Source: Macrostomum hystrix (taxonomy: Eukaryota > Animalia > Platyhelminthes). Taken from it: 64,000 bases of DNA. The notes beneath the pieces are model-generated. The model was not told the origin of the DNA and searched no databases. It saw nothing but the letters and a program-made list of their open reading frames with translations. A program made the position numbers and the translations under genes. The stretch is from NCBI GenBank assembly GCA_950097015.1, contig CATNEN010000001.1, forward strand, positions 26,598,001-26,662,000, in the 5' to 3' direction. The first letter of the stretch is position 1. Each line of letters begins with the position of its first letter. Below are positions 15,693 to 58,601 of this stretch, piece by piece.

Positions 15693-16647
15693 GCCTGCCA
15701 CCATAGGGAGCCGAAATAAATGGAAAATATTATACCTGTAGAATTCAGAAACATATAAACATATTTAAAGCAAGATTTAAGCATACGATAAGATAAAGCG
15801 GGGGAACACAGTTTCACATACTGCTAACAAAAATCCGAGTTAGCTTTGAAAGCTTGAGACGAAAAGGAAAGAATTGTTCAATCCCTTAATAAAACACTTA
15901 GTTGATATTTACGTTATCGAATACAAACACAGTGGGAGCTTAAAAATTCGCTTGTACATAAAAACCAAATCTAAAAAATATCCCAAAAACGTTGACATTC
16001 CCAACTCCCACTGGTACAACTTTAAACCTTTAGCAACACACTTAAACTCTCTACATTGACTGAACAGCCCATGGTACAAGTGGGGACAGGTGTAATAAAT
16101 TATAGTTTTTATACAGTAAAATTGTTCTTGACAAATTATTATTTTAAAAAGTCTGGATAACAACTAATAAATAACAATGAGACAATAAATAAAACTCGCA
16201 AGTGTGCTGAGGCACAAATCTCGCATATGTATTAGTTGAATCTCAAGATTGAGACACGAGAGAGAGTGAGATAAAGAGTCCGACTCGTAAAGAATAAGCA
16301 AATTAAAAAAAGGCATCAGAAATTTTGCATAACGGAAATACACTTGTGCCCATTTTCTTTGCCAATGTTAATAACCAACTGAAAATTGAAAGTACTAGCT
16401 GAAACCCCGCACTAAAAAACGATGGAAAATCGATAAATATTAGTCACTCTCGATTATCTAGGATATAAAAAAATAGAGGCTATACAAAACAAGATTTGGG
16501 AGAACTGACTCATCTGAGGATTTACCTACTTGACTTACTTGACTTAGCGGCAGGGGGCCTCCATGACGGACGCAGCGAGGAGGCGGCTGTTGCCGCCCAT
16601 ATCGCTAACCCCTGGCAGCCAGACGGCCTCCAGCGAGGCGGTGCCGC

Positions 16648-19600
16648 TCAGGGTGGTCCGTCGGTCGGTTCCGCCGCGCGATCTTCCTCGCCATAGGCTG
16701 GGAAGAAATCAGCTCGGCCGGTATCCCGGAGGAAGTGGGCGAGCTGAGGGATGTTCTCGGGCGAGCAGGCTTCGGCAAGAGTCGGTGCCGGCCCGAGGTG
16801 TTTTAGCCTAGCCCGGGTGAAGGCCGGGCAGTGGCAAATGAAATGCTCGGCGTTTTCACGGCCGGAGCAGCAGAAAGGACACGTTTCCTCAGGCACGTGG
16901 CCTTGGAGGTAGCGGTGTCTGGTGAAGCAGCCATGTCCCGAAAGGGCCATGGTGACTGCTCTCAGGTCTCTGCGGTTTAGCCTGAGTAAGGCCTTACGCA
17001 GGTTACTAGAGGGGGTTGGCACCGCAGCCCTGGACTGGCGACAGTTCAGGGTGCTGGACCACCTCCTCCGGTGCTGGGTCTCCATCCAGTGGTTGATGCT
17101 GGAGTTGACAACGGAGGCGGGGATCGGGGATTCCGGGCCCGGGCCCATCAGGGAGCTGGCTGCTCCAGCCTTTGCAAGCTCGTCCGCCATCTCATTCCCT
17201 GTGAGCCCGGCGTGCCCAGGGATCCACATCAGCTCCACCTTGTTAGACTGCGCCAAACCGTTTAACTGGGTGTTGCAGTCCAAGGTGGTTCTGGAGCGAG
17301 AGGTGCAGCGACTGAGGGCCTTGAGGGCTGCTTGACTGTCGGAGTGAAAAAAGATCCTCCGACCAGCCAGCTGCCTCTGGCGCAGCTCAGCCGCACAGAA
17401 GCTGATGGCGAGCATTTCGTTTTGGAAAACGCTTGAGCTCTTGCCACAGTGTTGGGAGTGGGTCCAGAGGACCTCGCCACCCGAGGCGACGCACACCCCG
17501 AATCCCGATTTACCGTTCATCAGGGAGCCGTCAGTGTAACAGTGGACTGCGGGGTCATCCCAGCAGTCCTTTACCTCATTACGAGGGAAGATGCTGACTT
17601 TGTACCTGTGGCTCCGGAGTAAAGTGGCCGGGGCCCCGTCCGAGAGGATGGTGAGCCCTCCGCACTCGCCCAGAGTTTTCAGGCAGAGGTCAGAGTGGGG
17701 CAGAAGGGAGCGCTTCGAGAAGGCTCGCGAATTCTGGAAGGATACACCCGCATCAAGGAGACGACGGGTGGACTTTGCCGCTTCCCCCTTAACAAAAATG
17801 TCAATGGGTGTAGCGTTGAGGAAAGCGTTCATGCCTTCAAAGGGAGTGGAGGGTGGGGCGCCCAGCGTCATGCGACAGGCTCTGCCCTGCACCCTATAAA
17901 GCGCCTCCAGGTTTTTCTGGATGCTCATGGCACTGGCCCAGATGAGGCCAGCGTAAGCGACTGACGGTCTAATGATCGCCGTGTAAATCCACCAAAGGTT
18001 TTTGGGGGTTAGCCCCCAAGTGGTGCCCACGGCTCGCCTGACTTGCGCCAGAATGGCCAGGGCCCTCTTGGCCTTTGTGGTAATGTGCGGGGTCCAGTTA
18101 AGCCTATGGTCTAGCAGGATACCAAGGCACCGGACCTGCTTTTCCATGGCAATATTCTTGCCATAGAGAGTCAGAGGCTCAATGGTCCAGCGCAGCCTGC
18201 TGGTAAACATAACCGCAACGGTCTTGGACTCAGAGAGTCGGAGCCCGCATTGGTCCGCCCAGCGCACCGCCCTGTTGATAAAGCCCTGAATGAGGTCCCT
18301 GGTGGTTTCCGCCGAGGGGCCCGCGCAGATGGCGGTCACATCGTCGGCATATCCCACCTTCAGGACTGGGTCAGGCCGAGTGCTTTTTAGCAGCTCATCC
18401 ATGACGAGATTCCACAGCAGTGGGGTGAGGACGCCACCTTGGGGCCCTCCTTTTAGGACAGGTGCCGAGAGCACCCTGCCTTCGAGGTGGGCCACCACGT
18501 GGCGATTCCGGATCATGTACATGACCCAACGGACGAGGTGGGGGTGAGTGGCCCTGGAAACCAGGGCCTTCTCAAAGGCTTCGAAAATAACGTTATCGAA
18601 GGCCCCCTCAATATCAAGGAAAACAGCCAGGGCAAAACCGCTGCCCAGCACTGCCTTCTCGAGAGTCTCCACAATGCAGTGGAGGGCGCTCTCCGTGGAC
18701 CGGCCCGCCCGAAAGGCGTGCTGGTTTGGTGAGAGCGGGGCCCGCCCTAGCTCTACAGTAAGAAGGCGCCAGAGCACCAGTCTTTCCATGAGCTTGAGGC
18801 AGGTGGAAGTCAAGCTTATCGGGCGATAAGACTTGACCGAGCGATAGTCGCCTTTGGCGGGCTTCGGGATGAAGACGACCCGGGCTTCATGCCACCGCGC
18901 TGGTACGTAGCCCAGCACGATGCAGGCCCGTAGAAGTCTGCAGAGGAGATGGAGGAAGCGGCCATTTTTAACCGCTTCATGCAGAAAGGCCGGATATATA
19001 CCATCTGGCCCAGGTGCTTTAAAAGGATTGAATGACTTAGCCGCGCGAACGATGCGGTCATTCGTAACGAGTGACTGAGCCAGGCCCTGACCTCCACGCG
19101 AGTGGTCGTCTGGGCCGAAGTGCGCCGGTACACTCGGGAAGAAATGCCCTAGCATAAGCTCGAGCGTTTCCTCCGGGCGCTCAGTGATCGAGCCGTCCGG
19201 CTTTTTAATCGATGAGAGCTTGGAGAAGCGGTCGTTGGTGAGCGCCTTTACCACGCGGGCCGTGGGCCGCGAGCCCTCAAGCCCTTCGCAGTATTGTCGC
19301 CACTTGTCCGCTTTTGCCCTTCTGACCCGGCCCTTAAACTCGTGGATGGCGCGAGTATAGGCCTCTTTGTCATCAGGGTCGTGCGAGGTTTTCAGCTTCC
19401 TCTGGAGAGCCTTAGCTCGGCGTCTTAGGACTCCGAGCTCGGGGTTCCACCAGGGGGCCGATTTTTTGCCTTTGTAGGCTTTGAGCGGGCAAGCCATTTC
19501 GTAGGCCTCTGTGATGGCGCCGCCCAGCAGGGCAGCCACTCCATCCAGGTCCTGCGTGGTTTCCATGGCCATGGAGGGGTCAGAATCCCGAAGGCCCTCA

Positions 19601-20352
19601 TGCAGCTTTTGGCTGAACGCGGGCCAGTCGGTATTTCTGACATTACGCCTCCAAATAGGCTTTTGCTTCTTATCGGGGGTGCCGATGTTGAAACGGATGA
19701 AACGGTGGTCCGAGAGCGAGCTTTCGGTCTCCCACACCTCCCACCCCAGCACCCTTGGGAGGATGCCGGGTGAGGCCAGGGTGACGTCAAGCACCTCAGC
19801 CCACCGCCCATTGTCGAAAGTGGGCGTGTTGCCCACATTGCAGAAGTTTAGAGGCGTGCCGCTGACGAAGGCCAGGAGCTCTTCGCCGCGGTCATTGATT
19901 TTTGAGCTACCCCAGTGGGTGTGATGCGAGTTTACATCTCCCGCGAGGAGCAGCTCGAAGTTTCGTGCCCTGGCGAATTCACAGAGGGCGACGAGGGTAT
20001 CGCTAACCACGGGGGCGTCGCCTGCCAGGTAGGCGGATGCCACGAGGGTCAACTTGTTAGGCACAATGTGTGCAGATTGGATGACGCAGATGTCCCCGTT
20101 AGAGAGATCGGGTCTCATCCACGCATTTAAGGCTTTTGCGGCATAGATCAGTGATCTAGGGCGGACAGAGTCTGCCATGCAGAAGCAGTCATAGCCAGCA
20201 GGAATGTTGCTTGGCTTGTTCTTTGATAGCCAGGGCTCCTGCACAAGTACAAGGCCCGGCATCATGCGCTCTGTCGTGCGCATCAGATTGACTGATGCTG
20301 CCACGCAGTGCTGGGTGTTAACTTGCAGACATGATATTCCGGGGATCATCAT
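16648..20352 (-). CDS. LINE ORF2: AP endonuclease, reverse transcriptase, RNase H, C-terminal CCHC knuckle (1234 aa, intact)
   Basis: VQEPW, GDVNSHH and SDH (APE); [28 protein letters not shown] and YADD (RT); YTDGS, SDSQAAL, WIPGH and GNEMAD (RNase H); CPFC...EHFICHC. Confidence 0.97.
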
Positions 20353-20364
20353 GCAGGCAGAGGT

Positions 20365-21495
20365 CTACTTGGAGGGGGACCCAGCCAGAAGGCGGTCCTC
20401 CTCCTCCGGGTCGATGTCGGTAGCCATGGGCTCCTCCGTGCCCAGGCCCCGAGCCGGAGACGGGAACTCGACGGCGTCAGCCGCCCAGTCCCCGCCCCCG
20501 GCCCCGAGCCCAGGCCCAGAGTCGCCCTCAACTGGAGCCGACACCGCTCCCTGGGCCGTGGGAGGGGCGCTCGAAGGGCCCTGCTCGATGGAGCTGGGCA
20601 CCTCTGAGGCCTCCCCCGTAGCCCTTGGTTGCGGCGCCTGCCCCGGTGGGCCACCGCGCATCTCAGCGCGCAGCTGGGCCATCTTGGCGGTTCGCACCAC
20701 CTCGGAGGCCCGCTGGAGAAGGCCCCGGCGCTTTGTGACACGCGCGGGGCGACGCTCAGAGCTGCCAGCGATGGCACGCTCTGGCCTTTTTTGGCGGGAC
20801 GACTGGGCCCTGCCCCCAGTCCCAGCCTTGGGGTCCGAGGACCCTTCATTGGCCGGTACGGTGGTGGGCCCGGTCTGACCTCGGGTTTTATCCGCCTCGA
20901 AGGCGAAGATTTTGGTCTTCCACAGACCAATGCAAATGTTGGCGCCATCTGGGTAGCGGCGTGTCCATTGCTCGGACAGGCCCAGAATGGCGGTGAAACC
21001 GGTGCCGTCGGGGCGCAGGATCGTGCGGTGCACGATCAGGCCCGCTGTCGGCAGCTCCCGGTTCATCGCGATGAGGCCCCTGCGGAGGTCCTCAGCGCTG
21101 GTGACGACACTTTTCGCCGGGACGAAGATACGGTGTCGCTTGGTCTTTGGTGGCTCGTTCTCCCGTAGGAACTCGAGGCCAGCCGCCCAGCTCTGCGTGG
21201 GCAGCAACTCGAGGAGCCGCCGCCCCGATTCCGCATCGCCGGGCCAGACGACGAAGCACGATTCCCTGGTAGCGCTTGCGCCGACCGCCAGGGGCTCGCC
21301 CTTCAGTTGAAGTTGCCACAACATAGCATCTATGTTGCGGCAAATGTCGCTGAGCTGTTCGCTGCTCAGCCTTTTCCCGTCTCTGCCGGTGATGATGACG
21401 GCAGGTTGCCTACGTGCGATGGCGGCGTAGGTAGCTTGTGGTCCCGGGCCCTGTCCGGTGGCGTCCCCACCCTCGGGATCTGCGTCGGCGGTGGG
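20365..21495 (-). pseudogene. 5'-truncated LINE ORF1
   Basis: Matches the C-terminal part of the copy B ORF1. Confidence 0.85.
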
Positions 21496-39884: not shown

Positions 39885-40669
39885 CAAGTCGCTTGTTTAG
39901 ACTAACTCGATGGTCTGTGGATTCACCTTTCACTTCAGTTTCGGCGCACTATTTTGAGTGGATTTCAGCTTCTTTAAGGGCTTCTTGAGCACTGTGTTAT
40001 CACCCATATAGTTTCTAAATTATATTTATTTCTTATTCTAAAGCTTTGGAACAAAACTGCACAATTGTGCCGCCTGTCCTTCTGTTTGTTAGTTAACTGC
40101 ATACTGTTTTGGTTTGTTTAAGTTGCTTGTTTTTCTCCTTTTACGTAATGCCGCATATTTGTCTCATCCATCCATTGTTTTATCTAGAGCTCTGCGAGTC
40201 AAATCCATGCTGCAATAGTACCTGAGTTCATGCTCTGTTCACTTGTTTTATTGAAGTATTTAATTAGTTAATTATCTGAAATATTATCTGGCCTCACTAA
40301 CTCACTGCTCACTGCTGTGCGTGCTCGGTCTCGCGAGCGAGGCTGCTCATTTGGGATGCAACAGCAACCTAGATCCTCAAGATGCCATTGTGAACCACCG
40401 TATCCCGATAGTTTAATATTGTCTACATGTTAAGCCCTCCGCTAACCGCATCATGTGTACATAATCAACTGCCCAACACCTCTCCTGTCTCCAGCCCTGC
40501 CTGCTGAATAATGAAATTTTCCGTAATTTGAATGCGAAATATACACCCTGGTCTGATGCTGGGTTCCGTTTCAGAGCAGAAGCTTTCACGTGTAAATCGT
40601 TGAATCGTGCAGCTTTTTGGAGGGCTGTTTAATTTTACTAAGTAGATTGACTTGCCAGTTTGGGTTAGG

Positions 40670-41140
40670 TGTAGCCTGAGGTATGGGGTGTGTGTAGCCT
40701 GAGGTATGGGGTGTGTGTAGCCTGAGGTATGGGGTGTGTGTAGCCTGAGGTATGGGGTGTGTGTAGCCTGAGGTATGGGGTGTGTGTAGCCTGAGGTATG
40801 GGGTGTGTGTAGCCTGAGGTATGGGGTGTGTGTAGCCTGAGGTATGGGGTGTGTGTAGCCTGAGGTATGGGGTGTGTGTAGCCTGAGGTATGGGGTGTGT
40901 GTAGCCTGAGGTATGGGGTGTGTGTAGCCTGAGGTATGGGGTGTGTGTAGCCTGAGGTATGGGGTGTGTGTAGCCTGAGGTTTGGGATGTGTTTAGCCTG
41001 AGGTTTGGGATGTGTTTAGCCTGAGGTTTGGGATGTGTGTTTAGCCTGAGGTATGGGGTGTGTGTAGCCTGAGGTTTGGGATGTGTGTAGCTTGAGGTAT
41101 GGGGTGTGTTTAGCCTGAGGTTTGGGGTGTGTGTAGCCTG
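40670..41140. repeat. 23-bp minisatellite (GTAGCCTGAGGTATGGGGTGTGT)n, left part of the array split by LINE copy B
   Basis: Tandem copies; the array resumes at 47482. Confidence 0.95.
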
Positions 41141-41255
41141 ACTTACTTGACTTAGCGGCAGGGAGCCTCCATGACGGACGCAGCGAGGAGGCGGCTGATG
41201 CCGCCCATATCGCTAACCCCTGGCAGCCAGACAGCCTCCAGCGAGGCGGTGCCGC

Positions 41256-44200
41256 TCAGGGTGGTCCGTCGGTCGATTCCGCCGCGCGATCTTCCTCGCC
41301 ATAGGCTGGGAAGAAATCAGCTCGGCCGGTATCCCGGAGGAAGTGGGCGAGCTGTGGGATGCTCTCGGGCGAGCAGGCTTCGGCGAGAGTCGGTGCCGGC
41401 CCGAGATGTTTTAGCCTGGCCCGGGTGAAGGCCGGGCAGTGGCAGATGAAATGCTCTGCATTTTCGCGTCCGGAGCAGCAGAAGGGACACGTTTCCTCAG
41501 GCACGTGGCCTTGAAGGTAGCGGTGTCTGGTGAAGCAGCCATGTCCCGAAAGAGCCATAGTGACTGCTCTTTGGTCTCTGCAGTTAAGCCTGAGTAAGGC
41601 CTTACGCAGGTTACTAGAGGGGGTTGGCACCGCAGCCCTGGACTGGCGACAGTTCAGGGTGCTGGACCACCTCCTCCGGTGCTGGGTCTCCATCCAGCAG
41701 TTGATGCTGGAGTTGACAACTGAGATGGGGATCGGGGACTCCGGGCCCGGGCCCATCAGGGAGCTGGCTGCTCCAGCCTTAGCAAGCTGGTCCGCCATCT
41801 CATTCCCTGTGAACCCGGCATGCCCAGGGATCCATAGCAGCTCCACCTTGTTAGACTGCGCCAACCCGTTTAACTGGGTGTTGCAGTCCAAGGTGGTTCT
41901 GGAGCGAGAGGTGCAGCGGCTGAGGGCCTTGAGGGCTGCTTGACTGTCGGAGTGAAAAAAGATCCTCCGACCAGCCAGCTGCCTCTGGCGCAGCTCAGCC
42001 GCACAGAAGCTGATGGCGAGCACTTCGTTTTGGAAAACGCTAGAGCTCTTGCCACAGTATTGGGAGTGGGTCCAGAGGACCTCACCACCCGAGGCGACGC
42101 ACACTCCGAATCCCGATTTACCGTTCATCAGAGAGCCGTCAGTGTAACAGTGGACTGCCGGGTCATCCCAGCAGTCCTTTACCTCATTACGAGGGGAGAT
42201 GCTGACTTTGTACCTGTGGCTCCGGAGTAAAGTGGCCGGGGCCCCGTCCGAAAGGATGGTGAGCCCTCCGCACTCGCCCAGAGTTTTCAGGCAGAGGTCA
42301 GAGTGAGGCAGAAGGGAGCGCTTCGAGAAGGCTCGCGAATTCTGGAAGGAGACACCCGCATCAAGAAGACGACGGGTGGACTTTGCTGCTTCCCCCTTGA
42401 CGAAAATGTCAATGGGTGTAGCGTTGAGGAAAGCATTCATGCCTTCGAAGGGAGTGGAGGGTGGGGCGCCCAGCGTCATACGACAGGCTCTGCCCTGCAC
42501 CCTATAAAGCGCCTCCAGGTTTTTCTGGATGCCCATGGCGCTGGCCCAGATGAGGCCAGCGTAAGCGACGGACGGTCTAATGATCGCCGTGTAAATCCAC
42601 CAAAGGTTCTTGGGGGTTAGCCCCCAGGTGGTGCCCACGGCACGCCTGACTTGCGCCAGTATGGCCAGGGCCCTCTTGGCCTTTGTGGTGATGTGTGGGG
42701 TCCAGTTAAGCCTATGGTCTAGCACGAGACCAAGGCACCGGACCTGCTTTTCCATGGCAATATTCTTGCCATAGAGAGTCAGAGGCTTAATGGTCCAGAG
42801 CAGTTTGCTGGTAAACATAACCGCAACGGTCTTGGACTCAGAGAGTCGGAGCCCGCATTGGTCCGCCCAGCGCACCGCCCTGTTGATAAAGCCCTGGATG
42901 AGGTCTCTGGTGGTTTCCGCCGAGGGGCCCGCGCAGATGGCGGTCACATCGTCGGCATATCCCACCTTCAGGACTGGGTCTGGACGAGTGCTTTTCAGCA
43001 GCTCATCCATGACGAGATTCCACAGCAGTGGGGTGAGGACGCCGCCTTGGGGCCCTCCTTTTAGGACAGGTGCCGAGAGCAGCCTTCCTTCGAGGTGGGC
43101 CACCACGTGGCGATGCCGGATCATGTACATGACCCAGCGAACGAGGTGGGGGTGAGTGGCCCTGGAGACCAGGGCCTCCTCAAAAGCTTCGAAAACAACG
43201 TTATCGAAGGCCCCCTCAATGTCTAGGAAGACAGCCAGGGCAAAACCGCTGCCCAGCACTGCCTTCTCGAGAGTCTCCACGATGCAGTGGAGGGCGCTCT
43301 CCGTGGACCGGCCCGCCCGAAAGGCGTGCTGGTTTGGGGAGAGCGGGGCCCGCCCTAGCTCTACAGTAAGAAGGCGCCAAAGCACCAGTCTTTCCATGAG
43401 CTTGAGGCAGGTGGAAGTCAAACTTATCGGGCGATAGGACTTGACCGAGCGATAGTCGCCTTTGGCGGGCTTCGGGATGAAGACGACCCGGGCTTCGTGC
43501 CACAGCGCTGGTACATAGCCCAGCACGATGCAGGCCCGTAGAAGTCTGCAGAGGAGATGGAGGAAGCGGCCATTTTTGACCGCTTCATGCAAAAAGGCCG
43601 GATAAATACCATCTGGCCCAGGTGCTTTGAAAGGGTTGAATGACTTTGCCGCGCGAACGATGCGGTCATTCGTGACGAGTGACTGAGCCAGGCCCTGACC
43701 TCCACGTGAGTGGTCGTCTGGGCCAAAGTGCGCCGGTACACTCGGGAAGAAATGCCCTAGCATAAGCTCGAGCGTTTCCTCCGGGCGCTCCGTGATCGAG
43801 CCGTCTGGCTTTTTGATCGATGAGAGCTTGGAGAAGCGGTCGTTGGTGAGCGCCTTTACCACGCGGGCCGTGGGCCGCGAGCCCTCAAGCCCTTCGCAGT
43901 ATTGCCGCCACTTGTCCGCTTTTGCCCTTCTGACCCGGCCCTTAAACTCATGGATGGCGCGAGTATAGGCCTCTTTGTCATCAGGGTCGTGCGAGATTTT
44001 CAGCCTCCTCTGGAGAGCCTTTGCTCGGCGTCTCAGGACTCCGAGCTCGGGGTTCCACCAGGGGGCCGATTTTTTGCCTTTGTAGGCTTTGAGCGGGCAA
44101 GCCATTTCGTAGGCCTCTGTGATGGCGCCGCCCAGCAGGGCAGCCACTCCATCTAGGTCCTGCGTGGTTGCCATGGCCATGGAGGGGTCGGAATCCCGAA

Positions 44201-44960
44201 GGCCCTCATGCAGCTTTTGGCTGAACACGGGCCAGTCGGTGTTTCTGACATTACGCCTCCAGATAGGCTTTTGCTTCTTATCGGGGGTACCGATGTTGAA
44301 GCGAATGAAGCGGTGGTCAGAGAGCGAGCTTTCGGTCTCCCACACCTCCCACCCCAGCACCCTTGGGAGGATGCCGGGTGAGGCCAGGGTGACGTCAAGC
44401 ACCTCAGCCCACCGCCCATTGTCGAACGTGGGCGTGTTGCCCACATTGCAGAAGTTAAGAGGCGTGCCGCTAACGAAGGCCAGGAGCTCTTCGCCGCGGT
44501 CATTGATTTTTGAGCTACCCCAGTGGGTGTGATGCGAGTTTGCATCTCCCGCGAGGAGCAGCTCAAAATTTCGTGCCCTGGCGAAATCACAGAGGGCGAC
44601 GAGGGTATCGCTGACCACGGGGGCATCGCCTGCCAGGTAGGCGGATGCCACGAGGGTCAACTTGTTGGGCACAATGTGTGCAGATTGGATGACGCAGATG
44701 TCCCCGTTAGAGAGATCGGGTCTCATCCACGCATTTAAGGCTTTTGCAGCATAGATCAGTGATCTAGGGCGGACAGAGTCTGCCATGCAGAAGCAGTCAT
44801 AGCCAGCAGGAATGTTACTTGGCTTGTTTTTTGATAACCAGGGCTCCTGCACAAGTACAAGGCCCGGCATCGTGCGCTCTGTCGTGCGCATCAAATTGAC
44901 TGATGCTGCCACGCAGTGCTGGGTGTTAGCTTGCAGACATGATATTCCGGGGATCATCAT
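41256..44960 (-). CDS. LINE ORF2 APE-RT-RNaseH-CCHC (1234 aa, intact)
   Basis: Same motifs and length as 16648-20352. Confidence 0.97.
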   Translation of the reverse strand: MMIPGISCLQANTQHCVAASVNLMRTTERTMPGLVLVQEPWLSKNKPSNIPAGYDCFCMADSVRPRSLIYAAKALNAWMRPDLSNGDICVIQSAHIVPNKLTLVASAYLAGDAPVVSDTLVALCDFARARNFELLLAGDANSHHTHWGSSKINDRGEELLAFVSGTPLNFCNVGNTPTFDNGRWAEVLDVTLASPGILPRVLGWEVWETESSLSDHRFIRFNIGTPDKKQKPIWRRNVRNTDWPVFSQKLHEGLRDSDPSMAMATTQDLDGVAALLGGAITEAYEMACPLKAYKGKKSAPWWNPELGVLRRRAKALQRRLKISHDPDDKEAYTRAIHEFKGRVRRAKADKWRQYCEGLEGSRPTARVVKALTNDRFSKLSSIKKPDGSITERPEETLELMLGHFFPSVPAHFGPDDHSRGGQGLAQSLVTNDRIVRAAKSFNPFKAPGPDGIYPAFLHEAVKNGRFLHLLCRLLRACIVLGYVPALWHEARVVFIPKPAKGDYRSVKSYRPISLTSTCLKLMERLVLWRLLTVELGRAPLSPNQHAFRAGRSTESALHCIVETLEKAVLGSGFALAVFLDIEGAFDNVVFEAFEEALVSRATHPHLVRWVMYMIRHRHVVAHLEGRLLSAPVLKGGPQGGVLTPLLWNLVMDELLKSTRPDPVLKVGYADDVTAICAGPSAETTRDLIQGFINRAVRWADQCGLRLSESKTVAVMFTSKLLWTIKPLTLYGKNIAMEKQVRCLGLVLDHRLNWTPHITTKAKRALAILAQVRRAVGTTWGLTPKNLWWIYTAIIRPSVAYAGLIWASAMGIQKNLEALYRVQGRACRMTLGAPPSTPFEGMNAFLNATPIDIFVKGEAAKSTRRLLDAGVSFQNSRAFSKRSLLPHSDLCLKTLGECGGLTILSDGAPATLLRSHRYKVSISPRNEVKDCWDDPAVHCYTDGSLMNGKSGFGVCVASGGEVLWTHSQYCGKSSSVFQNEVLAISFCAAELRQRQLAGRRIFFHSDSQAALKALSRCTSRSRTTLDCNTQLNGLAQSNKVELLWIPGHAGFTGNEMADQLAKAGAASSLMGPGPESPIPISVVNSSINCWMETQHRRRWSSTLNCRQSRAAVPTPSSNLRKALLRLNCRDQRAVTMALSGHGCFTRHRYLQGHVPEETCPFCCSGRENAEHFICHCPAFTRARLKHLGPAPTLAEACSPESIPQLAHFLRDTGRADFFPAYGEEDRAAESTDGPP

Positions 44961-44972
44961 GCAGGCAGAGGT

Positions 44973-46520
44973 CTACTTGGAGGGGGACTCAGCCAGAAGG
45001 CGGTCCTCCTCCTCCGGGTCGATGTCGGTAGCCATGGGCTCCTCCGTGCCCCGGGCCCGAGCCAGAGGCGGGAACTCGACGGGGTCAGCCGCCCAGTCCC
45101 CACCCCCGGCCCCGAGCCCAGGCCCAGAGTCACCCTCAACCGGTGCCGACACCGCACCCTGGGCCGTGGGAGGGGCGCTCGAAGGGCCCTGCTCGATGGA
45201 GCTGGGCACCTTAGAGGCCTCCCCCGTAGCCCTTGGTTGCGGCGCCTGCCCCGGTGGGCAACCGCGCATCTCAGCGCGCAGCTGGGCCATCCTGGCGGTT
45301 CGCACCACCTCGGAGGCCCGCTGGAGAAGGCCCCGGCGCTTTGTGATGCGCGCGGGGCGACGCTCAGAGCTGCCAGCGATGGCACGCTCTGGCCTTTTTT
45401 GGCGAGACGACTGGGCCCTGCCCCCAGTCCCAACCTCGGGGTCCGAGGACCCTTCAGTGGCCGGTACGGTGGTGGGCCCGGTCTGACCTCGAGTTTTATC
45501 TGCCTCGAAGGCGAAGATTTTGGTCTTCCACAGACCAATGCAGATGTTGGCGCCATCTGGGTAACGGCGTGTCCATTGCTCGGACAGGCCCAGAATGGCG
45601 GTGAACCCGGTGCCATCGGGGCGCAGGATCGTGCGGTGCACGATCAGGCCCGCTGTCGGCAGCTCCCGGTTCATCGCGATGAGGCCCATGCGGAGGTCCT
45701 CAGCGCTGGTGACGACACTTTTCGCCGGGACGAAAATGCGGTGTCGCTTGGTCTTTGGTGGCTCGTTCTCCCGGAGGAAGTCGAGGCCAGCCGCCCAGCT
45801 CTGCGTGGGCAGCAACTCAAGGAGCCGCCGCCCTGATTCCGCGTCGCCGGGCCAGACGACGAAGCACGATTCCCTGGTAGCGCTTGCGCCGACCGCCAGG
45901 GGCTCGCCCTTCAGTTGGAGTTGCCACAGCATAGCATCTATGTTGCGGCAAATGTTGCTGAGCTGTTCGCTGCTCAGCCTTTTTCCGTCTCTGCCGGTGA
46001 TGACAACGGCAGGTTGCCTACGTGCGATGGCGGCGTAGGTGGCATGTGGTCCCGGGCCCTGTCCGGTGGCGACCCCACCCTCGGGATCAGCGTCGGCGGT
46101 GGGCACAGGGCCCTCTGCCTCCGCTTCTCCTTCAGGCCGAGCCGCCGTCCGGATGGGCGCCGGGACCTCCTTGGCCCGCGACCCTGGCCTCGGGGCGTCG
46201 TGGGCTCCGCCCCGTGCAGGAGCCTGGGCAGGAGGCGCAAGGCCCCCCGCCCCAGCCCCCGCCCTAGGCAGAGCCCCTTCGGCCCCTCTGGTCTGGGCCC
46301 GGTCCTCGGTCGATGGAGCCGGCTTGCCGTGGGCCATTAAGCGCCTACGACGCTTTGCCGCTCCAGAGGTTGAGGAGCGCTTAGCGCCCCGGTCATCGCG
46401 CGAGTTGGGCAGCGCGGCATTTGTGGCGGTCGCGGGGCCAGCTAGCCCGGGCGCCGCAGCGTGTATGGCCTCGGGCACCATGGTGTCCTCGGCCGGAGCA
46501 GTTGGTAGGCTGGAAGCCAT
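44973..46520 (-). CDS. LINE ORF1 (gag-like; probable DUF4780-type domain as in LOA/Lian elements)
   Basis: First ATG at 46520 (MASSLP); SGAAKRRRR and TYAAIAR motifs, then a globular region VITGRDG...KIFAF; no CCHC knuckles; stop 12 nt before ORF2. The domain assignment is from recalled family features. Confidence 0.8.
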   Translation of the reverse strand: MASSLPTAPAEDTMVPEAIHAAAPGLAGPATATNAALPNSRDDRGAKRSSTSGAAKRRRRLMAHGKPAPSTEDRAQTRGAEGALPRAGAGAGGLAPPAQAPARGGAHDAPRPGSRAKEVPAPIRTAARPEGEAEAEGPVPTADADPEGGVATGQGPGPHATYAAIARRQPAVVITGRDGKRLSSEQLSNICRNIDAMLWQLQLKGEPLAVGASATRESCFVVWPGDAESGRRLLELLPTQSWAAGLDFLRENEPPKTKRHRIFVPAKSVVTSAEDLRMGLIAMNRELPTAGLIVHRTILRPDGTGFTAILGLSEQWTRRYPDGANICIGLWKTKIFAFEADKTRGQTGPTTVPATEGSSDPEVGTGGRAQSSRQKRPERAIAGSSERRPARITKRRGLLQRASEVVRTARMAQLRAEMRGCPPGQAPQPRATGEASKVPSSIEQGPSSAPPTAQGAVSAPVEGDSGPGLGAGGGDWAADPVEFPPLARARGTEEPMATDIDPEEEDRLLAESPSK

Positions 46521-46752
46521 TTGAAAGCTGCAATGAGGAGAGGGGCTTCCTGTAGACACAGGCAGGAATAACCCGCTCAGCCGCGATCCCAAAGCTGAGC
46601 GGGGGCAGCCAAAAAAGACAAGTTACAACCCGGGGTGGGATGCCAGGACCACCGGGAGGAACCGTAGGAGGCCAGACTACTCCCTGGTCAAGCGTCCATC
46701 AGCACGGTCAACACTGGGACATTAGAGGGCGCTATTTGGCCAGCGCCGAGGC

Positions 46753-47192
46753 CTGCGGACTGGCCGCATACCCTGTTAAGGTCAAAGGGTGACACCTTTC
46801 CCTCAGAGCCGAAGCCAGAGGTACCTGATCACGCACAGGTGCACGAACGCTGCGGACTGGCCGCATACCCTGTTAAGGTCAAAGGGTGACACCTTTCCCT
46901 CAGAGCCGTAGCCAGAGGTACCTGATCACGCACAGGTGCACGAACGCTGCGGACTGGCCGCATACCCTGTTAAGGTCAAAGGGTGACACCTTTCCCTCAG
47001 AGCCGTAGCCAGAGGTACCTGATCACGCACAGGTGCACGAACGCTGCGGACTGGCCGCATACCCTGTTAAGGTCAAAGGGTGACACCTTTCCCTCAGAGC
47101 CGTAGCCAGAGGTACCTGATCACGCACAGGTGCACGAACGCTGCGGACTGGCCGCATACCCTGTTAAGGTCAAAGGGTGACACCTTTCCCTC
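46753..47192. repeat. 97-bp tandem repeat (about 4.5 units) inside the LINE 5' UTR
   Basis: TGCGGACTGG recurs at 46754, 46851, 46948, 47045 and 47142. Confidence 0.95.
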
Positions 47193-47254
47193 CAACCGGG
47201 GCTAGAGGTACCCAGTTAGGCCGGAGGCCCTGGATGGGTCGTCCAGCGCTGTTG

Positions 47255-47481
47255 CCCATTCTGTCCGGCTGCCCTAGGGTCAGCCTTGAACACTCGCGGG
47301 ACGTGTACCCATGGGTCAGCTGACGGGACAACGTGGAGAGGATTCCTTCACCCGGAGGCACAGGTCTCCTTCCTGCCAAACCTGCTCAAAAAACTACTGC
47401 AGGTGTGAGGCATCGCAGACCTTAGCCCGTAGGCCTGGTCTGACTCATACCACACAGGCATTGTGTCCCGCCGGTGCGAGC
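47255..47481 (-). ncRNA. HDV-like (CPEB3-type) self-cleaving ribozyme at the LINE 5' end
   Basis: P1 GCUCGC/GCGAGU with a G1-U wobble; 160-nt J1/2; P2 CCCAU/AUGGG; P3 GGG/CCC; L3 UACACGU; P1.1 AC/GU; P4 GGCUG/CAGCC; J4/2 CAGA. G1 (47481) is the element boundary. Confidence 0.85.
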
Positions 47482-47855
47482 GTGTGTAGCCTGAGGTATG
47501 GGGTGTGTGTAGCCTGAGGTTTGGGATGTGTTTAGCCTGAGGTTTGGGATGTGTGTTTAGCCTGAGGTTTGGGTTGTTTGTAGCCTGAGGTATGGGGTGT
47601 GTGTAGCCTGAGGATCAGGATGTATGTAGCCTGAGGATCCGGATGTGTGTAGCCTGAGGATCAGGATGTATGTAGCCTGAGGATCAGGATGTATGTAGCC
47701 TGAGGATCAGGATGTATGTAGCCTGAGGATCAGGATGTATGTAGCCTGAGGATCAGGATGTGTGAAGCCTGAGGATCAGGATGTATGTAGCCTGAGGATC
47801 AGGATGTATGTAGCCTGAGGATCAGGATGTATGTAGCCTGAGGATCAGGATATGT
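47482..47855. repeat. 23-bp minisatellite, right part, drifting to GTAGCCTGAGGATCAGGATGTAT
   Basis: Tandem copies. Confidence 0.93.
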
Positions 47856-56502: not shown

Positions 56503-56575
56503 GCCCCAGTGGCGCAATGGATAGCGCGTCGGACTTCTAATCCGGAGGTTGAGGGTTCGAGTCCCTCCTGGGGTG
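56503..56575 (+). tRNA. tRNA-Arg (anticodon TCT), intronless
   Basis: Acceptor GCCCCAG/CTGGGGT; anticodon loop CTTCTAA; T-arm GAGGG-TTCGAGT-CCCTC; T8 Pol III terminator just downstream. Confidence 0.93.
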
Positions 56576-58528: not shown

Positions 58529-58601
58529 GCCCCAGTGGCGCAATGGATAGCGCGTCGGACTTCTAATCCGGAGGTTGAGGGTTCGAGTCCCTCCTGGGGT
58601 G
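58529..58601 (+). tRNA. tRNA-Arg (anticodon TCT), identical second copy
   Basis: Identical to 56503-56575; T6 tract about 35 nt downstream. Confidence 0.92.

What the first reader, a model, noticed from the sequence alone, without database searches (positions are those of the whole stretch)
47255..47481. HDV-like ribozyme whose cleavage site is the exact 5' end of a full-length LOA-type LINE
Seen, on the minus strand: P1 GCUCGC (47481-47476) pairs with GCGAGU (47297-47292), giving the G1-U wobble. P2 is CCCAU (47315-47311)/AUGGG (47259-47255). P3 GGG/CCC closes L3 UACACGU (CPEB3 has UUCACGU). L3 'AC' can pair with the 'GU' right after P1, an unusual A-U plus C-G P1.1. P4 is GGCUG/CAGCC, and J4/2 is CAGA (C-n-R-A) with the candidate catalytic C at 47263. 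The 160-nt J1/2 is closed by its own stem, GGCGGGACA/UGUCCCGUC. The base 5' of G1 is already host minisatellite. Established: HDV-like ribozymes process the 5' ends of R2, RTE, L1Tc and some R1/LOA-group elements. Inference: this element is cut out of read-through transcripts, needs no promoter of its own, and carries a 6-bp-P1, large-J1/2 variant that may be undescribed in this lineage.
Basis: partly seen in the sequence, partly recalled or inferred. Interest (0 to 1): 0.92.

Follow-up and report, generated by a model that had tools for sequence, protein, structure and literature searches.

The report
HDV-like ribozyme heading flatworm LINE
The first 227 bases of this intact jumping gene (a LINE in a Macrostomum-type flatworm) fit the hepatitis-delta-type self-cutting RNA in every sequence feature, and the predicted cut lies exactly where every full-length copy begins; this is a well-supported new example of a known trick, not a new kind of ribozyme.

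Summary
G47481 is the first base of a 6,343-nt intact LINE (window 41139-47481).

All 36 full-length heads examined start at this G next to unrelated flanks. Target-site duplications abut it with no extra base in 12-13 of 14 copies, and an empty-site allele ends exactly there. A permissive HDV descriptor gives about 0.6 hits per 128 kb of shuffled sequence, so the coincidence is not chance.

Weak points:
- There is no covariation, because all heads are 95-100% identical.
- No Rfam model matches.
- No RNA data were available, so cleavage is inferred rather than shown.

- 'LOA-type' was not testable here.
- 'Needs no promoter' is unshown.
- The 'possibly undescribed large-J1/2 variant' is not supported. 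Active R2 ribozymes with J1/2 loops of 216-498 nt are published.

This scan already reported the same head on other contigs of this genome (s1-394531, s1-408102).

One new point: the roughly 730-810-nt head (ribozyme plus a 97-bp repeat array) is 95-96% identical across five LINE families. Their ORF2 proteins are only 60-75% identical and their ORF1 proteins 33-47%. The head therefore looks like a recently exchanged 5' cassette.

The parts
41139..47481 (-). Full-length non-LTR retrotransposon, 6,343 nt
   Evidence: The 5' end is fixed by 36 copies, TSDs and an empty site. The 3' end is fixed by a second copy and by the tail ...TAAGTCAAGTAAGTCA shared across families.
47255..47481 (-). Predicted HDV-like self-cleaving ribozyme (i=1-227), cutting 5' of G47481
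   Evidence: Sequence, descriptor scan and constrained fold.
47476..47481 (-). P1 5' strand GCUCGC; G47481 is G1
   Evidence: Invariant in 26 distinct heads.
47316..47475 (-). J1/2 insert of 160 nt. Its closing stem is 47472-47464 with 47330-47322. The interior is the variable part of the head.
47311..47315 (-). P2 5' strand CCCAU
47298..47310 (-). P3 hairpin GGG-UACACGU-CCC. L3 bases A176 and C177 form P1.1.
47290..47297 (-). P1 3' strand GCGAGU followed by the J1/4 GU, which is the P1.1 partner
47264..47289 (-). P4 domain: U193-A218 and C194-G217, an internal loop, GGCUG/CAGCC, bulged A202, CC/GG, and loop CUAG
   Evidence: Lineage variants A202C and A212U occur here.
47260..47263 (-). J4/2 CAGA; candidate catalytic C at 47263
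   Evidence: invariant.
47255..47259 (-). P2 3' strand AUGGG
46753..47192 (-). 97-bp tandem repeat, 4.5 copies, in the 5' UTR; part of the head shared between families
44973..46520 (-). ORF1, 515 aa from the ATG; no Pfam match and no CCHC knuckle
41256..44960 (-). ORF2, 1,234 aa: APE endonuclease, reverse transcriptase, RNase H
41139..41255 (-). 3' UTR with a conserved hairpin and an (AAGTC/AAGTAAGTC)n-type tail
47482..47491 (-). Upstream copy of the target-site duplication GGCUACACAC (10-13 bp)
41129..41138 (-). Downstream copy of the target-site duplication

Best explanation
The first 227 nt of the element's RNA form an HDV-like, CPEB3-like nested double pseudoknot. Its 160-nt J1/2 insert folds on itself. 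When the element is transcribed from any upstream start, the ribozyme cleaves 5' of G1 (47481), using C219 (47263) in J4/2. Upstream host RNA is discarded, and the LINE RNA is left with a 5'-hydroxyl and first base G1. Reverse transcription to that end yields new copies that all begin at this G.

Shown here: the fold fits, and the boundary is exact.
Inferred: catalysis, co-transcriptional timing and the 5'-OH end.

The element may also carry its own promoter; the data do not decide this.
For: 1. Every sequence feature of the family that I could check is present: the P1/P2/P3/P1.1/P4 topology, a G1-U wobble closing P1, a 3-bp GC-only P3 with a 7-nt L3 differing from the CPEB3 consensus by one base, a canonical 2-bp P1.1, and C-N-R-A directly before the P2 3' strand.
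2. A descriptor scan finds 47481. It gives 0.6 hits per 128 kb in shuffles and hits at 3 other places in the real window.
3. 29 of 30 heads from the DNA search, plus 7 heads from two other ORF families, start at exactly this G with unrelated upstream DNA. The exception, L025, holds two copies truncated by 8-12 nt.
4. TSDs of 11-14 bp abut G1 with no extra base in 12-13 of 14 copies.
5. Contigs from four public runs carry the empty site of copy L002 and break exactly at flank|G1.
6. The HDV-like nested helices cost -94.3 kcal/mol, plus about -5.2 for P2, against an unconstrained MFE of -99.7.
7. Variants shared by lineages or seen in the runs fall in the J1/2 interior (i=21-151) or downstream of i=235. 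None falls in P1, P2, P3, P1.1 or J4/2.
8. The genome holds other LINE-head HDV-like ribozymes. The best scores 34.3 bits against the CPEB3 model, whose cut-off is 35.
9. The mechanism is established for R2, Baggins, R4, Dong and L1Tc (PMC3774820, PMC4035085).
Against: - There is no covariation: 25 of 32 pairs never vary and none has a compensatory change, because all heads are 95-100% identical.
- No Rfam family matches at E<=10, even when only the 3' core is searched.
- P1 has 6 bp, not 7.
- Two recently active lineages carry A212U, which breaks one P4 pair.
- No RNA run was available, so neither cleavage nor read-through transcripts were observed.
- The depletion of variants in the core is only modestly significant: about 3-4 expected and 0 seen.
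- My descriptor was written after I had seen the candidate.
Confidence: 0.8

Rival explanations
1. Dual system. The head is both an internal promoter that starts transcription at or near G1 and a ribozyme that trims read-through RNA, as in the Pr77/L1TcRz head of L1Tc. The 97-bp repeat array would be the promoter or enhancer part. This rivals only the reader's claim that the element needs no promoter of its own.
For: - A 4.5-copy 97-bp tandem array lies just downstream of the ribozyme. It travels with the ribozyme as one cassette across five ORF families.
- Pr77 is documented as promoter plus HDV-like ribozyme (PMC4035085).
- Tandem monomers act as promoters in mouse L1 (my own knowledge).
Against: Nothing here tests promoter activity. 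No RNA data were available.
Confidence: 0.35
2. Promoter only. G1 is a transcription start site set by an internal promoter, and the HDV-like fold is a non-catalytic coincidence.
For: - An exact shared 5' end alone is also what a precise TSS would give.
- There is no covariation and no Rfam hit.
Against: - A full HDV descriptor match landing on that exact base has a background of about 1e-5 to 1e-4 per position.
- 5' junctions carry no extra base in 12-13 of 14 copies. Capped LINE RNAs often add an extra G (my own knowledge).
- Several other LINE families in this genome carry HDV-like heads.
Confidence: 0.1
3. Decayed ribozyme. The head descends from an active HDV-like ribozyme but no longer cleaves efficiently, for example because P1 has only 6 bp or because the large J1/2 misfolds. 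It is kept for another role, such as translation or RNA stability.
For: - P1 is 6 bp.
- The unconstrained MFE uses part of P1 and P2 differently.
- Some predicted R2 ribozymes were inactive in vitro (PMC3774820).
Against: - P1, P2, P3, P1.1 and J4/2 are invariant in all recently active lineages.
- The 5' ends are exact in young polymorphic insertions.
Confidence: 0.07

Closest known systems
R2 retrotransposon HDV-like ribozymes, especially the silkmoth forms (PMC3774820)
   Same: An HDV-like double pseudoknot at the 5' end of a non-LTR element processes it out of a longer transcript. The J1/2 loop is very large: 216-498 nt in silkmoths, and active with a C-to-U knockout control.
   Different: R2 is site-specific in 28S rDNA and often cleaves upstream, at -28, using 28S sequence in P1. 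Here P1 lies wholly inside the element, insertion is not site-specific, and P4 is present. ORF2 is of the APE+RT+RNase H type, not the R2 type.
Baggins1 (LOA clade), RTE, R4 and Dong ribozymes (Ruminski et al. 2011, cited in PMC10879173; summarised in PMC3774820)
   Same: Cleavage falls at the exact 5' end of a dispersed LINE. The proposed role is 5' processing of co-transcripts.
   Different: I could not read the primary paper, which is not held. I also could not place this element in the LOA clade. The sequences are unrelated as far as I could test.
L1Tc Pr77 / L1TcRz head of trypanosomatid L1Tc/ingi elements (PMC3185411, PMC4035085)
   Same: The ribozyme sits at nt +1 of the element. The head is shared by several element families. 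A promoter-plus-ribozyme dual function is possible.
   Different: Pr77 is a compact 77-nt head conserved by descent within one clade. Here the head is about 730-810 nt with a 160-nt J1/2 and 97-bp repeats. It is near-identical across families whose proteins are 60-75% (ORF2) and 33-47% (ORF1) identical, which points to recent exchange.
Mammalian CPEB3 ribozyme (Rfam RF00622)
   Same: The core is very similar. L3 is UACACGU against UUCACGU, J1/4 is GU, and J4/2 is C-N-R-A directly before P2.
   Different: The Rfam model does not match. P1 is 6 bp rather than 7. J1/2 is 160 nt. P1.1 is fully Watson-Crick. The RNA sits in a retrotransposon, not an intron.

Membership tests
HDV-like self-cleaving ribozymes | Nested double-pseudoknot topology: P1, J1/2, P2, P3, L3, P3', P1', J1/4 (P1.1), P4, J4/2, P2' | tested here: met
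   All helices are present in the right order and were found by the descriptor scan. 99.2% of cells are paired across 26 distinct heads, against 31-47% when the partners are slid.
HDV-like self-cleaving ribozymes | Cleavage 5' of the first P1 nucleotide, with a G-U wobble closing P1 | tested here: met
   G1-U190 is present and invariant. Only the position is shown, not the chemistry.
HDV-like self-cleaving ribozymes | Catalytic C at the start of a C-N-R-A J4/2, directly before the P2 3' strand | tested here: met
   C219-A-G-A is followed by AUGGG and is invariant.
HDV-like self-cleaving ribozymes | 3-bp P3 with a 7-8-nt L3 that supplies a 2-bp P1.1 with J1/4 | tested here: met
   GGG/CCC with L3 UACACGU; A176-U192 and C177-G191 can pair. 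The CPEB3 consensus is shown for comparison.
HDV-like self-cleaving ribozymes | Helices supported by compensatory changes among relatives | tested here: inconclusive
   0 compensatory pairs; 25 of 32 pairs never vary, because all heads are 95-100% identical.
HDV-like self-cleaving ribozymes | Match to a curated covariance model (RF00094, RF00622, RF02682 and others) | tested here: not met
   No hit at the gathering score or at E<=10, whether the whole head or only the 3' core is searched. The Rfam models are narrow and do not allow a 160-nt J1/2.
HDV-like self-cleaving ribozymes | Mg2+-dependent self-cleavage giving 2',3'-cyclic phosphate and 5'-OH ends, abolished by C-to-U | not testable with these tools
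   This needs a bench assay. No RNA runs were available.
Ribozyme-headed non-LTR retrotransposons | Predicted cleavage site equals the element's 5' boundary in independent insertions | tested here: met
   36 heads start at G1. TSDs abut G1. An empty-site allele breaks there.
LOA clade of non-LTR retrotransposons | ORF2 with APE, RT and RNase H domains | tested here: met
   Pfam Exo_endo_phos_2, RVT_1 and RNase_H match. The I, R1, Tad1, Ingi and Nimb clades share this domain set, so it is not specific.
LOA clade of non-LTR retrotransposons | RT-domain phylogeny groups the element with LOA, Bilbo or Baggins references | not tested
   No reference RT sequences could be obtained. The named database hits are uncharacterised proteins.

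The most novel reading that the evidence does not exclude
The roughly 730-810-nt head (ribozyme, structured J1/2 and 97-bp monomer array) is a mobile 5' cassette. It has recently been swapped, probably by template switching or recombination, among at least five co-resident LINE families whose ORF2 proteins are only 60-75% identical. On this reading, selection acts on the ribozyme (and perhaps promoter) cassette as a unit that is separate from the coding body.
Probability: 0.6. Interest if true: 0.5.

Novelty: new member of a known kind. Interest (0 to 1): 0.4.

Why it matters
This adds a clean, recently active flatworm example to the list of LINEs that use an HDV-like ribozyme to define their RNA 5' end. 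Hundreds of copies, insertion polymorphism and exact junctions make it a convenient system for bench tests. Those tests include how a 160-nt J1/2 domain affects folding. The sharing of one head by five diverged LINE families suggests that ribozyme heads move between families. That bears on how LINEs acquire and replace 5' UTRs.

Tried and rejected
- **Rfam.** Scans of the whole window, of 47100-47600 and of the 3' core alone found nothing for this region.
- **Rfam models on the whole genome.** CPEB3 gave other LINE-head ribozymes (best 34.3 bits), which are not relatives of this head. The HDV model gave nothing.
- **Covariation within the genome.** The two odd copies in L025 are 5' truncations, not P1 variants. 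Heads from families A to C are about 96% identical, so the pair counts are uninformative. The family D copy I fetched is truncated inside the repeats.
- **Relatives from other species.** Searching the genome with P0004 led back to the same family.
- **RNA evidence.** The look-up of sequencing runs listed four runs from one study, of unknown kind and held as contigs. No read starts or read-through RNA could be seen.
- **Clade assignment.** No reference RT sequences were available. ORF1 has no Pfam domain and no CCHC motif.
- **Literature.** Ruminski 2011 (PMC3308841) is not held. No paper mentions HDV-like ribozymes together with Macrostomum.
- **Other descriptor hits.** Those at 39.4-39.5 kb and 20.5-20.7 kb were rejected as GC-rich, low-complexity or ORF1 coding sequence. 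The plus-strand hits at 47297 and 47324 were not inspected.

Full report
**What is there.**
On the minus strand, window 41139-47481 is a 6,343-nt non-LTR retrotransposon.
- ORF1 is 515 aa from the ATG (44973-46520). It has no Pfam match and no CCHC knuckle.
- ORF2 is 1,234 aa (41256-44960) with APE endonuclease, reverse transcriptase and RNase H domains.
- The 5' UTR is 961 nt and contains a 97-bp repeat in 4.5 copies (46753-47192).
- The element ends in ...TAAGTCAAGTAAGTCA.
- It sits inside a 23-bp minisatellite with a 10-13-bp target-site duplication.
- The closest named proteins come from Macrostomum lignano (77% identity over part of ORF2). The genome is 220 Mb, so the host is a Macrostomum-type flatworm.

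**The observation.**
With i = 47482 - position:
- P1 is 1-6 with 185-190, including the G1-U190 wobble.
- J1/2 is 7-166, closed by a 9-bp stem (10-18 with 152-160).
- P2 is 167-171 with 223-227.
- P3 is 172-174 with 182-184, around L3 UACACGU.
- P1.1 is A176-U192 and C177-G191.
- P4 is 197-201 with 211-215, plus two inner pairs.
- J4/2 is C219-A-G-A.

I add that U193-A218 and C194-G217 can extend P4. J1/4 is then just GU and C219 follows P4 directly. That is the arrangement in the Rfam CPEB3 consensus (...GCG UUCACGU CGC GGCCCCU GU CAG...CUG CGAA UUCUGCU).

Forcing P1, P3 and P4 while leaving the P2 strands free gives -94.3 kcal/mol. P2 adds about -5.2. The best nested fold is -99.7, so the pseudoknotted fold is competitive.

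**Is it more than chance?**
I wrote a permissive HDV descriptor:
- P1 of 6-7 bp;
- a Watson-Crick 3-bp P3 with L3 of 7-8 nt;
- a 2-bp P1.1;
- P4 of at least 4 bp;
- C-N-R-A before a 5-bp P2;
- J1/2 up to 220 nt.

It finds 47481. In 20 shuffles of the window it gives 0.6 hits per 128 kb. In the real window it gives 10 hits at four places. Two of the other three lie in GC-rich CAG-type or ORF1 coding sequence on the minus strand. The third, on the plus strand inside the ribozyme region (47297, 47324), I did not inspect. The per-position background is therefore 1e-5 to 1e-4. The hit falls on a base that independent evidence marks as the element's first. The descriptor was written after I had seen the candidate, which inflates the fit somewhat.

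**The 5' boundary.**
- A DNA search of the genome gave at least 209 candidates. The 40 that were scored are 95-100% identical.
- In 29 of 30 fetched loci the copy starts at exactly GCTCGC, next to unrelated upstream DNA. The exception, L025, holds two copies truncated by 8-12 nt.
- Seven more heads from other ORF families start at the same G.
- For 14 copies I located the 3' end. TSDs of 11-14 bp abut G1 with no extra base in 12-13 of them. L013 has one extra base, and L004 lies in a repeat and is ambiguous.
- Contigs from four public runs (one study, kind not recorded) carry the flank of copy L002 and continue into non-element DNA exactly at flank|G1. That DNA is the L002 3' flank after a single TSD copy. 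This is an empty-site allele, so the insertion is polymorphic and young, and its first base is G1.

**Conservation and covariation.**
I aligned 26 distinct heads (A1) and counted pairs on the pseudoknotted structure.
- 99.2% of cells are paired. No pair has a compensatory change, and 25 of 32 pairs never vary. The covariation test is therefore uninformative.
- Variants shared by lineages, and variants seen in the runs, lie in the J1/2 interior (i=21-151) or downstream of i=235.
- Three lineage-level variants lie in the core: U181C (last L3 base), A202C (a P4 bulge) and A212U, which breaks U200-A212 in P4.
- None lies in P1, P2, P3, P1.1 or J4/2. About 3-4 would be expected there at the local rate, which is only modest support.

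**Databases.**
- No Rfam family matches this region at the gathering score or at E<=10, even for the 3' core alone.
- Run on the whole genome, the CPEB3 model finds other LINE-head ribozymes (best 34.3 bits, cut-off 35; L3 UUCACGU). The HDV model finds none.
- Earlier notes of this scan list several ribozyme-headed LINE families in this genome, including this same head on two other contigs.

**A shared head.**
Searching the genome with a related protein showed several ORF2 families. I compared full-length representatives, labelled WIN, A, B, C and D.
- ORF2 proteins are 60-75% identical and ORF1 proteins 33-47% identical.
- ORF2 DNA is 64-74% identical, and most of ORF1 does not align.
- The first 730-810 nt (ribozyme plus 97-bp array) are 95-96% identical between WIN, A, B and C. 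Family D shares the array at 90-94%, but its fetched copy is truncated inside it.
- Heads linked to ORF1 lineages at 82-100% identity to WIN, and to families A and C, are all 95-100% identical.

Co-divergence cannot explain a noncoding head that is 96% identical next to proteins this different. The head must have been exchanged recently between families. Recombinant 5' ends are known in mouse L1 (my own knowledge), and a shared ribozyme head is known in the trypanosomatid L1Tc/ingi elements (PMC4035085). The step in identity here is unusually sharp.

**How it most likely works.**
The element is transcribed from upstream, or from its own promoter, which is undecided. The head folds, and C219 catalyses cleavage 5' of G1. 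The LINE RNA then starts at G1 with a 5'-OH, and reverse transcription to that end gives copies with exact host|G1 junctions.
- The fold and the boundary are shown here. Catalysis is inferred.
- Junctions without an extra G fit an uncapped RNA (my own knowledge of L1 junctions) but do not prove it.
- The 97-bp array that travels with the ribozyme could be a promoter or enhancer, as in the dual Pr77 system.

**Compared with what is known.**
- HDV-like ribozymes process R2, and cleavage at the element's 5' end is reported for Baggins, R4, Dong and L1Tc (PMC3774820).
- Planarian R2 also has a predicted ribozyme (same paper).
- J1/2 loops of 216-498 nt occur in active silkmoth R2 ribozymes (same paper), so a 160-nt J1/2 is not new.
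- I could not test whether the element belongs to the LOA clade.

No RNA runs were found.

**Verdict.**
This is a real and well-supported new member of a known kind, and this scan had already seen it on other contigs. Confidence that it is a functional ribozyme is about 0.8. Interest is moderate, raised a little by the shared-cassette observation.

Noticed in passing
L050, L051, L052, L053 compared with window 41139-47481: Five co-resident LINE families have ORF2 proteins 60-75% identical and ORF1 proteins 33-47% identical. They nonetheless share a 95-96% identical 5' head of about 730-810 nt (ribozyme plus 97-bp repeats). Identity drops sharply before ORF1, which points to recent exchange of the head between families.
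   Followed up: partly
window 41139-41255 (-) and the 3' UTRs of L050-L053: The 3' UTRs of the five families share a conserved block (CAGGGGTTAGCGGAATGGGCG...CGCCTCCCCGCTGCGTCC) and the tail TAAGTCA(A)AGTAAGTCA. One hairpin changes GGCGG/CCGCC to GGCGA/TCGCC, which looks compensatory. This may be the RT recognition structure. Tail repeats (AAGTC/AAGTAAGTC) vary between copies.
   Followed up: no
L002:1783 (G000:C7, about 616608): Contigs from four public runs carry the empty site of this insertion, that is, the flank, one TSD copy and the other flank. The family is therefore polymorphic for insertions and was recently active.
   Followed up: partly
window 16531-21495 (-): A second copy of the same family, 96% identical and 5'-truncated. 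It starts at element position 1379 and so lacks the ribozyme head.
   Followed up: partly
window 56503-56575 and 58529-58601 (+): Two identical tRNA-Arg(TCT) genes lie 2 kb apart.
   Followed up: no
window 40669-41141 and 47485-47851: A 23-bp minisatellite (about 36 units in all) was split by the LINE insertion.
   Followed up: no
L043:1501-1573 (-), L044, L045: Other HDV/CPEB3-like ribozyme candidates in the genome have L3 UUCACGU or UUCACGC and score 27-34 bits against Rfam CPEB3 (cut-off 35). L045 sits directly after a CAG repeat.
   Followed up: no
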